DNA of 64,000 bases from Antechinus flavipes (lineage: Eukaryota). Shown in pieces: positions 8,685 through 64,000 of the stretch. Where the stretch lies: positions 117,304,001-117,368,000 of the forward strand of contig NC_067398.1 of assembly GCF_016432865.1 (NCBI RefSeq). Direction: 5' to 3'. The notes beneath the pieces were generated by a model. That model was not told the DNA's origin. It did no database searches and saw nothing but the letters and a program-made list of their open reading frames with translations. Position 1 is the first letter of the stretch, and every line of letters starts with the position of its first letter. The translations under genes and the position numbers were made by a program.

Positions 8685-8937
8685 NNNNNNNNNNNNNNNN
8701 NNNNNNNNNNNNNNNNNNNNNNNNNNNNNNNNNNNNNNNNNNNNNNNNNNNNNNNNNNNNNNNNNNNNNNNNNNNNNNNNNNNNNNNNNNNNNNNNNNNN
8801 NNNNNNNNNNNNNNNNNNNNNNNNNNNNNNNNNNNNNNNNNNNNNNNNNNNNNNNNNNNNNNNNNNNNNNNNNNNNNNNNNNNNNNNNNNNNNNNNNNNN
8901 NNNNNNNNNNNNNNNNNNNNNNNNNNNNNNNNNNNNN
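8685..8937. other. Assembly gap (253 N)
   Basis: Run of N. Confidence 0.99.
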
Positions 8938-55006: not shown

Positions 55007-57536
<2,530 letters not shown>

Positions 57537-58679
57537 GTTTTCCTTGGCTATGTTGGTAGTTTCCTGGGTGGAGATAGTAAAGTATAAGCCAGACTTTTCT
57601 GTAATAATGGCATAATCCTGTTTATTATGTAATTCAAGATCAGATCATTCTCACTACCCAACTTCTCTTTCCCCTGCTCTGTGTATCTCTACTTCCTTAA
57701 TTTTTTTTTTTTTTTTTTGCTTCTCTACCTTTCTAAAACTTAGGGTGGAGATCCAAATCCAGGGTGTGGCTGCTCTAGCAGAAAACAAGGACTGAGAAGT
57801 CTGGGCTACAATGAAAGGAAATTAGTTTGGGACCCTCTGGCATATCCACCATCAGCTCTAGAGTCACCTTATTTAGATGCACACAAGGGCCTGTTAAATA
57901 ATGTCTGCCTCAATCTTCTCATTTAATAAAGCAACAAACTCAAGAGGGGAAAGCAAGCTTAGAACCTCAGATGAAAGTGAAAGAAGTATTTTGGGGGCAG
58001 CAAAGAATAGACCCCCAACCAACTAACAATTTCCAAAACCCAGAGCTAGAATACAGGTTTCCTAATTCCCTAGGCTCCTGTTTCTTTTCTTTATACCACA
58101 TATCCTTTCCTTGCCAACCCCTCAAGGGCATTTCAAGGTCAGGCTGCTCTGTCCAGTAAGCTTAGAGATACTTTCACAAAATGAACATAGTAGATGACTA
58201 GAGGTATTAGGTTGACCCCTGTGAAGGGCAAGAGCCCAGCCTCCATTTTAAAAGACAGCTCTGCCTTCCATCATTCCCAGTCAGCTGACTGCTACAGGAG
58301 CTAAAAGGGGCAGTGAAAAGGGAGGCAGCAGCAAGTCAGACATGTCCTGGGGGGCAGACGTGTCCAGACAGTTTCCCTCTAGATTGCTCCTTTCCATCAT
58401 TCCATCCACAGTTGCAACCTAGGTAGCTCAAGGTCACTCCCGATTAAGAAAAGCTACAGGATGTGATGGAAGGCATTAGTGGAAGGCGATAGCAAACCCC
58501 GATGGTAATTTCCCCTGTAATCGGGTTTCCCTTCTTCTCCAACTCACTCCCTTCATTAAATTTTCCTAAGGTAGTTATTGCCCGGAAACACCAGGACCAG
58601 GCCGAGCCATGCCCACAATTGTACCCCCTTCGCATTCCTCCCTCGTGGCAAGTCGTCCTCTTCCCATCCTCAGCTGCGG

Positions 58680-59460
58680 CTGGGCTCTAGAACCCTCAAG
58701 CCCCCACTCCCCTCCCCCACTCTCTCCCCGGCGGAGGGCAGCTCTCGGGCGCGCCCTCCCCCGCGTGACTCAGCCTTCCGCCCCGGCTGTCGCATTGCGC
58801 ACAAAGCATCAACATTCCAGTTCGGGAATTGTGAAGCGGGATGAGGGGACCAGCGACCTGCCTGTTCCCAGCACCACCTTGTCCCAAAGGGCAGCGCGGG
58901 TCGGGGCACAGGTACGGGTTCGGCCGCAGGGGTTCTATCGGGCGCTCCTCGTAGCCTAAGATCCGAACTCCCTCAGCCCCATCAGCCTCGCTCACCTGGC
59001 CTTCGGAAGCGGGCTGCGGGCCTCGGTGGTGGGCTTACCGGCAGGAAGAAGACTGCTTACGGTCGGGAGCCGAACTTCTGCGCTTTCCGAATCCGAACGT
59101 CGCCTATTGAACTCAGGAGGGGCGGAGCAAAGGCGGAGTCTGACCATTTAAAGAGACCGCGCCTCCTACCCGGGGGTTGGGGGACGGAAGGGGCGGGGAA
59201 AACTGTTTTCGCCCAATCAACGAGCGAGAATGCTAAAGCCAGGGATAGCGAATGACCATACGCAGCAACGCTCCCAGAGCTCCAAAAAAGGGACGGGGGA
59301 GAGATGTTCTGCTTCTGTTCCCGCCCTACCTTCGGACGTGACTGGGACCACGTCCTTTGGGTCGCGCACCACCCCCCCCAAACCCCAGGCAGCTGCTGCT
59401 CCCCCAACCCCCCCCTCGCCGCCCCCATCCCAGCTTAGGACAGCGTGACGCACACATTTT
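58680..59460 (-). promoter_or_regulatory. ALDOA housekeeping-type CpG promoter and leader exon(s)
   Basis: CpG island; TATA-like TTTAAAT ~59146-59152 (-); donor GACC|GTAAGC ~59060; HRE pair at 59334-59355. Confidence 0.7.
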
Positions 59461-60317
59461 CGTCCTGAGGGAAGAGTAGGAAGATGGGGGAGGGGTGTAC
59501 AAAAGGAGGATAGATGAATGTTGGCAGGTGATGGGGTGGGGGGTGGGGGGGAGCGCCAGAAGATGAAGCAAAGTGGCTGAGGAGGAAAGGAGGAAGCTAG
59601 ACATTGGGGTGATTTACCCAAGCACTATTTCCTTGGTATTTTCCCCTCCCAGATTACCCAAACTTCCTGGAGAGGTACTCAGATCTGCCTCCACTTTTAT
59701 GTCCCATTCCATTTTGTCCCCTCCACCCTCTCTTTGCTGCTTGCAGTAACCCTTCCACGAAATCTGATCTCCTCCCAAGCCCCGATCTTCCTTAAAGGTC
59801 AGCTCAAGCCCCGTCAGTTCCCCTCCCTCCTCCGCTCCCCTTCGAAGATGCAGCTGCGCAACTTTAGTGCAATCCTCTAGACAGCCAGCCCGGTGGCCGC
59901 GCCCTATCTTGCAGGAGCCAGCAGCGACAGGTCTCAGCTGGCTAGAATGCTAAACCTGGCCGGTTCGAGCCGGAGGTTCGATGGTTCCATCCCCTCAAGC
60001 GCTAGATAAAACCCAAGGGAGGGAAGCGGGAGGTCATTTTGTCCTTTGGATAATACCCAAATTTCATTCCTACATGCACCATCTGCCCAATTAGTTCCCA
60101 AATCACATTCCTCCTACTTTGCTTAGAATTTAGATTTCCCTGGACTTTGGCATCATTTCATTACTTTCCCTCTTTCCAACTTTCCCCCACCTACCCTTCC
60201 TCACCCTTATTAAAACCACTTTTCACCAATTCTTATTTTCACTCCCTCATTATTCCCTCCCGCCCAAGAATCCAGCCCACCCCATTTTCTCTGCTCAGCT
60301 ACCCTCTCAATACCCAC

Positions 60318-60510
60318 CTAAATGGAGCCTGGAGGTAGTTTAGACTCAAGCCTGGGCAGTGAGTGCTCAGGCAGGGGTTGGTTGGAGTTATAAAGTACTC
60401 CCCACCCTCCTCTTGGAATTTTCCCGACCTTCTCTTATGACCCCTGCCCTTTCCCCATCCCAGCTTCTCTGGCAGGGAACTATATTTAGGGGAAACCTGA
60501 AGCCCCTGAC
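60318..60510 (-). promoter_or_regulatory. ALDOA muscle-type promoter and short leader exon
   Basis: Minus strand: MEF3 TCAGGTTTC (60492-60500), MEF2 CTAAATATAG (60480-60489), TATA TTTATAA (60388-60394), donor TAG|GTGGGT at 60318/60317. Confidence 0.75.
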
Positions 60511-61626
60511 ATTCGGGCCAGGATAGGGCTTAGAGCAGGGGAGGGGAAGAAATTAGAGGAGGGGGAGTGACCAAGAGGTCTTCTGCTAGGTAGAGAGTGA
60601 TCTAATAGACCGAAGGCAAAAGCAGGCAGAGAAAGGCAGACATATGTAACCACTTCCCACTCACCAGCAGTTGAGTTGCCATCCTTTTCTATCGTGATCA
60701 GTGATGCTGCCCTGCCTGCCAAAGGAGATACAGGGTTGAAATCTTTACGGTAGTAAACCACAAAGTAGTTAGTATTAAGTCTCCTTTCTCCCAACCTTAG
60801 GCCTTCCTTGATTCTCTTCCTGGACCTCAATAGTGTCAGTCCTTATTCAGAGTACTTATTTCAGAGTTGGGAAGAGAAAGGTATACACATATTTCCTAAG
60901 AGAATGGGGAGTTGGCAGATGTAGCAGTACTAGTCCCACATAGGTCACCCTGAGGCAGCTGAATGGCTCAGTGGATAGTATGTTGGGCCTGGAAGCTGTA
61001 AGTCCTGAATTCAAATCCAGCCTCAGATGCTTACTAACTAGGTGACCTTGGTCAATTAAGTTTTTCCCCCCTTTTCTTTTTTTGTCTTAATCCACTGGAA
61101 AAGGAAATAGAAAACCATTCCAGTATCTTTGCCCATGAATGGCATGGTTCACAGAGTTATGAACAGTGGGACGTGACTGAACAACAAAGGTCACCCTGAA
61201 ATCTTAACTCTGGGCAGAATTTCCTGAACTCAGCCTCGTCTGAGGAGGAATGAATACTACCAGTCCTAACTTGAGCCATGTCCCTTCACTCCTCTCTACT
61301 GGTAGGGGTAAGGCTGAGCAGGAACCAAGAATTTACTCAAGAAAACTAGCCTCTCATGAATTTTCTCCAAGGTGCTTGAGGTCCCCAGCTCTTAAGAAGG
61401 TTTACTTCTTTTAGGGTAACTGCTCTCTGCATCTTGCTAGGAGAGCCTGGATCTTCTCTGCTTAGGTCCAATGAAGACCAAAGGATGGCCCGCCCTTGGG
61501 AACAGGTGGGCAAGACAGTTGGGGCTCCAATGAGGTGGTGATCCTACTGCCAGGGAATGTTTCTCAGCACTTGGGGTAGACAGGTCCTCTGGAAGGCCAC
61601 GTTCCATAACCGTGAACAAACGATCC

Positions 61627-61740
61627 TCATCTGAGCTTGATTTCAAAGCAAAGGCAATTGAGGCTTTGACAATCGGGCAGCTGGCAGGCACAGGCACAGT
61701 CACACAGTGGGAAGCATCTGGGGCACTGGGGAGTCCAACC
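61627..61740 (-). CDS. Terminal coding exon of a cysteine-rich uncharacterised protein upstream of ALDOA (5' exons lie beyond the window)
   Basis: Acceptor ttttccctcag then phase-0 frame GWTPQCPRCFPLCDCACACQLPDCQSLNCLCFEIKLR* (9 Cys in 37 aa). Recalled match to the C-terminus of human LOC112694756 (...PRCCPLCDCACTCQLPDCQSLNCLCFEIKLR); not database-verified. Confidence 0.8.
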   Translation of the reverse strand, partial: GWTPQCPRCFPLCDCACACQLPDCQSLNCLCFEIKLR

Positions 61741-61989
61741 CTGAGGGAAAAGGATGAAAAGGAATGATAGGAAAAGTTAAAAGAGGAAAGCAATAAGGGT
61801 TGTGAAGTTCAGAGAGGTTACAGGAGTGTTGTAGGAAACAAAATATGATAGCTCCCATTTAGAGAAACACTTTTCAAAGTGCTTTATTCACAACAACCCA
61901 GTGAGACATTATAAGCATCTTTATCTGCATTATATGGATAAACAAGGTTCAGAAAGAATAAATGCCTTGCCCTTGATCCTAAAAAAAGC

Positions 61990-63240
61990 AGTCTACAAAT
62001 CAGGTCTTCTACCTCCTCCTATTCACTTCTCAATTGATTCCAGTTTGGGCTTCTAACTTAATTCAAATAAAATGTATTTTTCCAAATTGCCAAATCCCAC
62101 AGGTGTCTCAATCTTCTTGAATTCACCTCTGCTGACATTGCTACCCAGTTTCTCCTGGATACTGTCTCTTCAATAGTTTTAGTGGCACTGTTCTCTACAG
62201 GTTGTCTTTGTTTGACAACTCCTTTAAAATCTCTTTTGCTGAAACATTGCCTGTGTCCTACCCCTAAATTATGGACACTTTTCTCTCTATACTCCTTCAG
62301 TGATCTCATAAACCCTCACCAATTTGATAATCATATCCATATAGAAGACTTCCAGACTTTGTTTTATTTCTAAGCTTCAGTTCAGCATCATTATCTACTT
62401 TGATATCTCCTGTTCTTTGTGATTTATGCCTCTCAAATTTCAACATCTTAAAAACATTATTTCCCCTTCCTTAAGCTTCATCATTTCTGTTCAGGATACA
62501 ACCACCCTTCCAACACTTCAGGTTTGTAAGCTGGGACTCATCCCTGCTTCTTTTTCAACCCCTTTAGTTAGCTGCCAATTCTTGTTAATGTTCCCTCTCC
62601 TCCCAGTTGTTCCCTTCTGTCTCTCATATGGTCAACAATCCTACTTTAGGCTTCATCACTTCTCACTGTAACTACAACAGTAACCTTCTACTTGAATTCC
62701 TGGTCTATCTCCTCTCTAAGCTATCCTTAAAATTATTTTTCTAAAGCATATGTCAGAACATATCACTGCTCTACTCAAGACCTCCAGTGCCTCCCTATAC
62801 CCCTTAAGATAAAATAGAAACTCCTCAGGTAGCAATTAAATTCCTTCACAACCAGGTCCCAGTCTGCCATTACTCTCCTTTATGTACTTCATTCTCTTCA
62901 CTAGTCAGCTTCTTGTTCCCCAAGCTATGTGTCCCATTTCCCACTTTTAAGCTTGTGCACAAACTGCCTTCATACCGGAAACACATCCTTTTCAGTTTCC
63001 TTTTAGCTTCTTCAAGGGTCATTTCATGTACCATCTCCTATGAGAAATTGTTTCTGGTTCTCCTCTTTTCTCTCTCTCAAATCATTATGTATTACTTATC
63101 TGTTTACTCACTGTTTCCTCCCAGTAGAGTATAAATTTCACAGAATCATGGACTTTGCTTTTTGTCTTTATATTCTTGGCCTCTGGAATGATGCCTTATA
63201 CAGCATCCATCACATAGGCACTTAATATTTGTTGGATTGG
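61990..63240 (+). mobile_element. Degraded L2 LINE fragment
   Basis: Pyrimidine-rich L2 ORF2/3' phrases ending cacataggcacttaatatttgttggattgg; boundaries approximate. Confidence 0.6.
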
Positions 63241-64000
63241 ATATAAATATAATGAATGTTAAGAGCTAGATTGGAACTCATTTTGATTCTAAATCTATTG
63301 CCCTTTACTTTTTGCTATGTTGCTTTTAAAGGATAGTGGGGATATGAAAGTTGATATATCATTCAAGATCACTATATAACAATGTGTTCATTTCATGTCT
63401 AGTCTTAAAATAGATTCTCATGTAGAAGTAAATGCAATTGGATAGTGATTTTTGACTCTATTTAAAGACAGCTAATTTCCCCTCTCAGAATCACAAAAAG
63501 AAGGTTGGAAAAATGGCCAAAAAACAACTACCAGCTAAGAGAAAGAGATAATGGTTAGAGAGACTGTCTTCCAAGGAGTAGGAACAATTTGTCACTGAAA
63601 CAGCAGTATGTGGGAAATATTCGACTTCTTCCTTTTCCCCCTCTAGAGCAATGTATTGGATTTAGGCCAGCCAAACTGAAGCACTTCCCCCCTTCCCTCT
63701 CCCCACCCTGAATTCTCCTGGAGGGGTATGGGATTAAAAGGTCAAATGTTTAAAGCCAGAAAGAGGACTAGATATCAGTCACAGTTAAAAAGCCTGATCA
63801 AGACCTGCCCAGTCCAGAAATAGGAAAATGGCATTTACAAGATCAGAAGTTTCAGGATTAGGTGTCATATTCTTTAAGAGATCATGTTATCTCCAGTGTT
63901 GGTGTGTGTATGTCTGTACACCCAGTACAGAGGAGGAGGACAGGACACTACACGTGTATACACACACATACACACACACACACACATTCTTTATGCTAGT

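What the first reader, a model, noticed from the sequence alone, without database searches (positions are those of the whole stretch)
61627..61740. Hidden cysteine-rich protein exon in the ALDOA upstream region
The ORF track misses this exon because it has no start codon and only 37 codons. It follows a clean acceptor and encodes GWTPQCPRCFPLCDCACACQLPDCQSLNCLCFEIKLR*. I recall a nearly identical C-terminus in an uncharacterised human protein (LOC112694756, with an N-terminal TM segment) encoded in what was long treated as ALDOA 5'UTR. Such identity across the marsupial-eutherian split would mean strong protein-level selection on an essentially unstudied gene. The CxC/CxxC-rich tail suggests metal binding or clustered palmitoylation (inference). 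The upstream exons must lie beyond base 64000.
Basis: partly seen in the sequence, partly recalled or inferred. Interest (0 to 1): 0.9.

Follow-up and report, generated by a model that had tools for sequence, protein, structure and literature searches.

The report
Last exon of unnamed Cys-rich gene
The 37-codon stretch is real: it is the last coding exon of the marsupial copy of an annotated but never-studied small membrane protein gene (human LOC112694756), which lies just upstream of ALDOA and whose cysteine-rich tail has barely changed from invertebrates to mammals.

Summary
On the minus strand, window 61627-61740 reads 37 sense codons plus TGA, directly after a pyrimidine tract and AG. An in-frame TAA lies 13 codons upstream and there is no ATG, so it can only be a spliced terminal exon.

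A whole-library search with the 37-mer hit the C-termini of proteins named "uncharaterized LOC112694756 homolog" at E 5e-14 to 1e-12 and 89-95% identity. These include a human 87-aa entry and annotated marsupial genes.

Compared with eutherians and echidna, substitutions in the exon are mostly synonymous (pN/pS 0.07-0.17, Fisher p 1e-7 to 1e-10). The flanks are at random-level identity, and the AG and stop keep their positions. ALDOA lies downstream in every mammal checked.

The full protein is about 139 aa: a short N-terminus, one transmembrane helix and a Cys-rich, probably cytosolic tail. The upstream exons lie beyond base 64000.

A profile search extends the family to fish, amphioxus, a hemichordate, a nemertean and an annelid, with the C-terminal motif almost unchanged. 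I found no Pfam family, no solved structure and no functional paper.

The exon is therefore not hidden. It is an already annotated gene of unknown function. Metal binding versus palmitoylation remains open.

The parts
61627..61740 (-). Terminal coding exon (37 codons plus TGA) of the marsupial orthologue of LOC112694756. It encodes the Cys-rich C-terminal motif.
   Evidence: sequence and translation. (E 5e-14, 95% identity to C-termini). (97% identity to the Sminthopsis and Notamacropus proteins). (pN/pS 0.07-0.17; variable sites by codon position 7/5/26).
61741..61780 (-). 3' splice site: pyrimidine-rich tract ending in cAG (AG at 61742-61741), phase 0. A possible branch point is ttaac at 61780-61776. 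The in-frame TAA at 61779-61777 closes the frame upstream.
   Evidence: sequence; the AG and a pyrimidine tract sit at the same position in Tachyglossus, Tamandua, Echinops and Acomys; phase-0 junctions follow from exon-by-exon tblastn. The branch point is inference only.
61743..64000 (-). 3' part of the last intron. It holds no other coding exon of the gene, so the start-codon exon, the TM exon and the middle Cys-rich exon lie beyond the window end.
   Evidence: no match to residues 1-103 of the marsupial proteins. (no plausible ORF piece). (collinear with the Sminthopsis intron at 91% identity). (last intron 3.8 kb in Sminthopsis).

Best explanation
Window 61627-61740 (minus strand) is the last coding exon of this marsupial's orthologue of the annotated, uncharacterised gene LOC112694756 (mouse Gm57854, zebrafish si:ch211-198p11.6). 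This part is shown. The gene lies head-to-tail upstream of ALDOA. It encodes a protein of about 140 aa built from phase-0 exons: a short N-terminus, one transmembrane helix, a middle Cys-rich exon that some annotated isoforms lack, and this terminal exon. The next steps are inferred. Basic residues follow the helix and there is no signal peptide, so the N-terminus probably faces outside or the lumen, and the tail of about 88 residues with about 20 cysteines sits in the reducing cytosol. The terminal exon carries the most conserved motif of the family, which reads roughly CDCAC-x-CQ-x-P-[DE]-C-x2-[IL]-NC-[LI]-CFE-[IV]-K. Both its cysteines and its non-cysteine residues are nearly fixed across bilaterians. 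My preferred reading, which is inference, is that this tail forms a membrane-tethered metal-thiolate (Zn or Cu) or partner-binding module, and that the juxtamembrane cysteines are probably S-acylated as well.
For: Identity: six C-terminal hits, E 5e-14 to 1e-12; names, accessions, human and many mammalian members; 77 and 121 family members. Protein-level selection: pS 0.62-0.72 against pN 0.05-0.12; Fisher p 1e-7 to 1e-10; 26 of 38 variable sites at third positions; exon 76-82% identical, flanks 23-38%. One search shows the exon as an isolated island of alignability. Synteny: an ALDOA (Glycolytic) gene lies 2.7-4.4 kb downstream of the gene in Sminthopsis, Monodelphis, Tachyglossus, Tamandua and Echinops; its called start is 0.9 kb downstream in Notamacropus and 0.6 kb in Acomys, where a longer ALDOA isoform is annotated. 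In the window the distance is 4.1 kb. Architecture: alignments; AlphaFold helix 25-54, pLDDT 83-97. Deep conservation of the motif: (amphioxus, Ptychodera, Tubulanus, shark, teleosts).
Against: No RNA, ribosome or peptide evidence could be examined, and exons 1-3 of this genome are outside the window, so an intact full-length gene in this species is inferred from Sminthopsis (98% identical exon). The biochemical role is unsupported by any test. AlphaFold gives the tail pLDDT of about 40-48, there is no Pfam or PDB relative, and one otherwise near-invariant cysteine is Phe in the window and in Sminthopsis. Several 'conserved' cysteines are replaced in some lineages: C19 of the exon is Y, F or W in sauropsids and coelacanth, and one Cys is Phe in amphioxus. 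This fits neither a strict metal site nor a strict acylation site cleanly.
Confidence: 0.85

Rival explanations
1. Same gene and same exon, but the cysteines act mainly as a multi-site S-palmitoylation cluster that pins the tail to the inner leaflet, as in a cysteine-string protein, and not as metal ligands.
For: CC and CxC clusters start a few residues after the TM helix. By protein-language-model features, the nearest named clusters are small single-pass proteins with a short ectodomain (influenza B NB, coronavirus E, influenza M2, scores 0.67-0.76, leads only). From my own knowledge these proteins are acylated next to the membrane. AlphaFold predicts no fold for the tail.
Against: Non-cysteine residues of the terminal motif (D, A, Q, P, D/E, N, F, E, K) are as conserved as the cysteines from nemertean to mammal. 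This points to a defined structure or binding surface, not to a generic acylation patch. The motif lies about 60-85 residues from the membrane.
Confidence: 0.35
2. The segment is not translated: it is a conserved non-coding element or an untranslated upstream exon of ALDOA transcripts, and the open frame is incidental.
For: Two Prolemur database entries of this protein carry the ALDOA gene name, which suggests shared transcripts. No AATAAA or ATTAAA follows the stop for 3.7 kb.
Against: The substitution pattern is that of a coding frame: third positions dominate and pN/pS is 0.07-0.17. The stop codon and the acceptor are fixed in position. The frame is kept, with the same motif, in animals where ALDOA is not the neighbour (turtle and gecko) and in invertebrates. 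The lack of a poly(A) hexamer is not significant given the G+C content.
Confidence: 0.03
3. The exon is a relic: the gene is decaying in this dasyurid lineage (Cys-to-Phe change, upstream exons perhaps lost).
For: A cysteine that is conserved in at least 90% of 44 family members is Phe here and in Sminthopsis. The upstream exons cannot be seen in the window.
Against: The frame, acceptor and stop are intact. There are only 2 differences in 114 nt from Sminthopsis, against 91% identity in the surrounding intron. Sminthopsis has a complete four-part gene with the same Phe.
Confidence: 0.04

Closest known systems
LOC112694756 family (human A0A2R8YDM7, mouse Gm57854, rat LOC103691235, zebrafish si:ch211-198p11.6, amphioxus C3YCS3)
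   Same: The C-terminal 37 residues are 89-97% identical to mammalian members. The window shares the phase-0 acceptor, the stop position and the location upstream of ALDOA.
   Different: Thr at residue 3 and Phe at residue 10 of the exon, where most members have Ala and Cys. Only the last exon is inside the window.
Keratin-associated proteins, SMCP and late cornified envelope proteins (the names automatic pipelines gave many members)
   Same: High cysteine content with CC and CxC spacing.
   Different: There is no Pfam keratin-associated, SMCP or LCE match in any of 44 members even at E 10. The family has a conserved TM helix and a unique C-terminal motif and is not a tandem-array gene. These names are composition-driven misnomers.
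Metallothioneins and other metal-thiolate cluster proteins
   Same: CxC, CC and CxxC spacing, about 25% cysteine and, by inference, a cytosolic location.
   Different: This protein is membrane-anchored, its non-Cys residues are strongly conserved, and it has no sequence-family match. Metal binding is untested.
Small single-pass proteins with a short ectodomain (influenza M2 and NB, coronavirus E) and cysteine-string proteins
   Same: Short ectodomain, one helix, basic residues and cysteines just after the helix. Feature similarity is 0.67-0.76 (a lead only). That those viral proteins have acylated juxtamembrane cysteines is my own knowledge.
   Different: No homology. The tail here is much more Cys-rich and ends in a fixed motif, and there is no evidence of oligomeric channel function.

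Membership tests
LOC112694756 / si:ch211-198p11.6 family | C-terminal motif of the form CDCAC-x-CQ-x-P-[DE]-C-x2-[IL]-NC-[LI]-CFE-[IV]-K-x-x, ending the protein | tested here: met
   the motif is present unchanged, and the stop follows at the family's position.
LOC112694756 / si:ch211-198p11.6 family | Terminal exon entered through a phase-0 acceptor directly before the G/S/D-W codons | tested here: met
   cag|GGTTGG in the window. The same junction occurs in Sminthopsis, Tachyglossus, Tamandua, Echinops and Acomys.
LOC112694756 / si:ch211-198p11.6 family | In mammals, a position immediately upstream of ALDOA on the same strand | tested here: met
   (ALDOA first coding exon at 57333-57536 on the minus strand, 4.1 kb downstream). 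Searches show the same order in seven other mammals. The TLCD3B side lies outside the window.
LOC112694756 / si:ch211-198p11.6 family | N-terminal single TM helix (P-x-P-A-I-V..Y-L-L-L) and a middle Cys-rich exon | not testable with these tools
   these exons are not in the window because the intron runs past base 64000. They are present in the closest relative, Sminthopsis.
LOC112694756 / si:ch211-198p11.6 family | Purifying selection on the reading frame | tested here: met
   pN/pS 0.07-0.17, Fisher p of 1e-7 or less, and codon-position bias 7/5/26.
Keratin-associated protein / SMCP | Match to the curated family profiles | tested here: not met
   none of 44 family members matches any such Pfam model at E up to 10.
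Metallothionein | Match to metallothionein profiles or structures; demonstrated metal binding | tested here: not met
   no profile or PDB match. Metal binding itself cannot be tested here.

The most novel reading that the evidence does not exclude
The gene encodes a bilaterian-wide, membrane-anchored metal-thiolate or redox module with no described relative. In mammals it is physically coupled to ALDOA, with shared or read-through transcripts, and it sits inside the 16p11.2 copy-number interval. It could therefore be an overlooked dosage-sensitive gene with a conserved cellular role, for example metal handling at a membrane.
Probability: 0.15. Interest if true: 0.7.

Novelty: already known. 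Interest (0 to 1): 0.35.

Why it matters
The gene model already exists in public annotation, so the exon itself is not a discovery. The family remains a blank. It is a protein of about 140 aa whose C-terminal 25 residues are almost unchanged from nemerteans and amphioxus to mammals. I found no Pfam model, no solved structure and no functional paper, only mentions in lists of genes inside the human 16p11.2 deletion/duplication interval. Many database names for it (keratin-associated protein, SMCP, LCE-like, and even 'elongation factor Tu' and 'G protein gamma 4') are wrong. A protein this conserved and this unstudied is a reasonable target for basic characterisation.

Tried and rejected
- I searched for the upstream exons in window 61741-64000 by six-frame inspection and by tblastn with marsupial, monotreme and eutherian proteins. 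Nothing was found.
- Pfam scans of five members at E 1 and of 44 members at E 10 gave no family, only scattered single hits to TM families.
- A profile search of PDB sequences at E 10 gave nothing.
- AlphaFold2 with a 44-sequence alignment was confident only for the TM helix. The tail had pLDDT around 40-48, so I ran no fold search, because a low-confidence model gives meaningless matches.
- I tested for a poly(A) hexamer between the stop codon and ALDOA as a sign of read-through. It is absent for 3.7 kb in the window and largely absent in five other mammals, but shuffles show this is expected at that G+C content, so it is uninformative.
- Logan and ENA contigs carrying P0004 turned out to be unspliced genomic fragments, not transcripts. 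They gave no evidence on transcript structure and I did not pursue them.
- Literature searches on LOC112694756, AC093512.2/ENSG00000285043, Gm57854, LOC103691235, ch211-198p11.6 and A0A2R8YDM7 returned only gene lists and expression tables.
- The coelacanth protein was not on record for a locus look-up. Monodelphis and Notamacropus DNA was not retrievable because the files were too large.

Full report
**What is in the sequence.**
- A pyrimidine-rich tract of about 40 nt ends in cAG, with the AG at 61742-61741, immediately before the first codon.
- The same frame holds a TAA at 61779-61777, and there is no ATG in between.
- The frame can therefore be used only as a spliced terminal exon.
- The only run of N in the window is at 8685-8937, which is irrelevant here.

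**Context.**
The window carries TBX6 on the plus strand at about 40.6-43 kb and PPP4C on the minus strand at about 46-51.5 kb. ALDOA is on the minus strand, with its first canonical coding exon at 57333-57536. A CpG-rich stretch lies at about 58.5-59.5 kb. The exon lies 4.1 kb upstream of the ALDOA coding start on the same strand.

**Homology.**
- phmmer of the 37-mer against 1.84 billion representative proteins gave six hits at E 5e-14 to 1e-12 and 89-95% identity. Each hit is at the very C-terminus of its target.
- The cluster look-up names them "uncharaterized LOC112694756 homolog". Many members carry composition-driven misnomers such as keratin-associated protein 10-x or SMCP. One member is a human 87-aa entry.
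- Papers on 16p11.2 rearrangements list LOC112694756 between TLCD3B and ALDOA.
- A full-length query found annotated marsupial genes (Sminthopsis 140 aa, Monodelphis 141 aa, Notamacropus, Petaurus), an echidna gene, turtles, an alligator, geckos and coelacanth.
- tblastn of these proteins against the window matches only residues 104-140, at 61630-61740, with 92-97% identity. The earlier exons are not in the window.

**Gene structure and synteny.**
- I fetched loci for Sminthopsis, Tachyglossus, Tamandua, Echinops, Acomys, a turtle and a gecko.
- They show the same exon plan: a start-codon mini-exon, a TM exon, a middle Cys-rich exon and the terminal exon.
- The exon boundaries imply that all junctions are phase 0. 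This explains why shorter annotated isoforms that lack the middle exon stay in frame.
- The last intron is 3.8-11 kb in mammals.
- ALDOA is the next gene downstream in all seven mammals checked. Its called start is 2.7-4.4 kb from the stop in five of them, and nearer in Notamacropus (0.9 kb) and Acomys (0.6 kb), where a longer ALDOA isoform is annotated.
- In the turtle and gecko the downstream neighbour is an SH2/SH3 adaptor gene. In the gecko a TLC-domain gene lies upstream.

**Selection.**
| Measure | Result |
|---|---|
| Synonymous differences per site, window vs Tamandua, Echinops, Acomys, Tachyglossus | 0.62-0.72 |
| Non-synonymous differences per site, same pairs | 0.05-0.12 |
| pN/pS | 0.07-0.17 |
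| Fisher p | 1e-7 to 1e-10 |
| Variable sites by codon position, six mammals | 7 / 5 / 26 |
| Exon identity to eutherians and echidna | 76-82% |
| Identity of the 114 nt on either side | 23-38% (random level) |

- The AG, the pyrimidine tract and the stop codon are at the same positions in all of these species.
- In a 7-kb blastn comparison the exon is an isolated island of alignability.
- The window is 98% identical to Sminthopsis in the exon and 91% identical over 4.2 kb of intron. It also shares the Sminthopsis Cys-to-Phe change, so the genome is probably a dasyurid (inference).

**Depth of the family.**
- A profile of 15 members retrieved 121 proteins.
- They include salamander, caecilian and frogs, lungfish, sturgeon, bowfin, teleosts, a ray and a chimaera.
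- They also include amphioxus (E 5e-24), the hemichordate Ptychodera (E 5e-22), the nemertean Tubulanus (E 2e-14) and the annelid Paralvinella (E 3e-12).
- Apart from the annelid entry, whose C-terminus diverges, the invertebrate members share the whole architecture. The C-terminal motif is nearly the same, roughly CDCAC-x-CQ-x-P-[DE]-C-x2-[IL]-NC-[LI]-CFE-[IV]-K.
- No bird appeared among the rows listed. This is not evidence of absence.

**What the protein may do.**
- AlphaFold2 with 44 sequences gives one confident helix at residues 25-54 (pLDDT 83-97). The tail has no confident fold (pLDDT about 40-48).
- Arg and His residues follow the helix and no signal peptide is apparent. By the positive-inside rule (established knowledge), the tail is probably cytosolic. 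This is inference.
- A cytosolic tail with about 20 cysteines cannot rely on disulfides. The realistic options are metal-thiolate clusters, S-acylation, or both.
- The non-cysteine residues of the terminal motif are as fixed as the cysteines. I therefore favour a defined metal-stabilised or partner-binding module, with S-acylation of the juxtamembrane cysteines likely as well.
- None of this is tested. There is no Pfam family and no PDB relative. Only architecture-level similarity to small single-pass proteins with a short ectodomain appears in the Atlas.

**Known or new.**
The gene model is public and widespread, so the exon is already known and was not hidden from annotation. I found no functional literature, only gene lists and expression tables.

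**Relation to ALDOA.**
A companion note in this scan (s1-204766) suggested a bicistronic transcript.
- No poly(A) hexamer follows the stop for 3.7 kb, but shuffles show this is not significant.
- Two Prolemur entries of this protein carry the ALDOA gene name. This hints that annotation pipelines see shared transcripts.
- A conserved promoter-like block lies between the stop and ALDOA, so at least some ALDOA transcripts probably start downstream of this exon.
- Transcript data are needed to settle this.

Noticed in passing
window 60325-60529 (minus strand): This is a second island conserved from echidna to eutherians, about 1.1 kb downstream of the stop codon. It contains an invariant CTAAATATAG (MEF2-type consensus) and, about 120 nt further on, a TTATAA box. 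It looks like a muscle-type promoter, probably the known muscle-specific ALDOA promoter; that identification rests on my own knowledge and was not checked against a reference sequence.
   Followed up: partly
window 57537-61626 (minus strand); L001-L004, L007: No AATAAA or ATTAAA occurs for 3.7 kb after the stop of the Cys-rich gene, and such hexamers are few or absent in the same interval of five other mammals. Shuffles show this is expected at that G+C content, so it neither supports nor refutes read-through into ALDOA.
   Followed up: yes
window 61711-61713 (minus strand; codon 10 of the exon): TTC (Phe) stands where at least 90% of 44 family members have Cys. Sminthopsis has the same change but Monodelphis, Notamacropus and Petaurus do not, so it is probably a dasyurid-specific substitution.
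   Followed up: partly
L005 (turtle) and L006 (gecko): In these reptiles the gene is compact (last intron 0.27-1.3 kb). It is followed by an SH2/SH3 adaptor gene, not ALDOA, so the tight linkage to ALDOA is not ancestral to amniotes, or has been rearranged.
   Followed up: no
database names of family members: Many members carry clearly wrong automatic names: keratin-associated protein 10-x/5-x/4-3, SMCP, Mst84Db, LCE-like, delta homolog 2, agouti signaling protein, elongation factor Tu and G protein gamma 4.
   Followed up: partly
window 63945-63990: A (TG/CA)n-type microsatellite lies at the window end. It matches simple repeats in the Acomys locus and is of no relevance to the gene.
   Followed up: no
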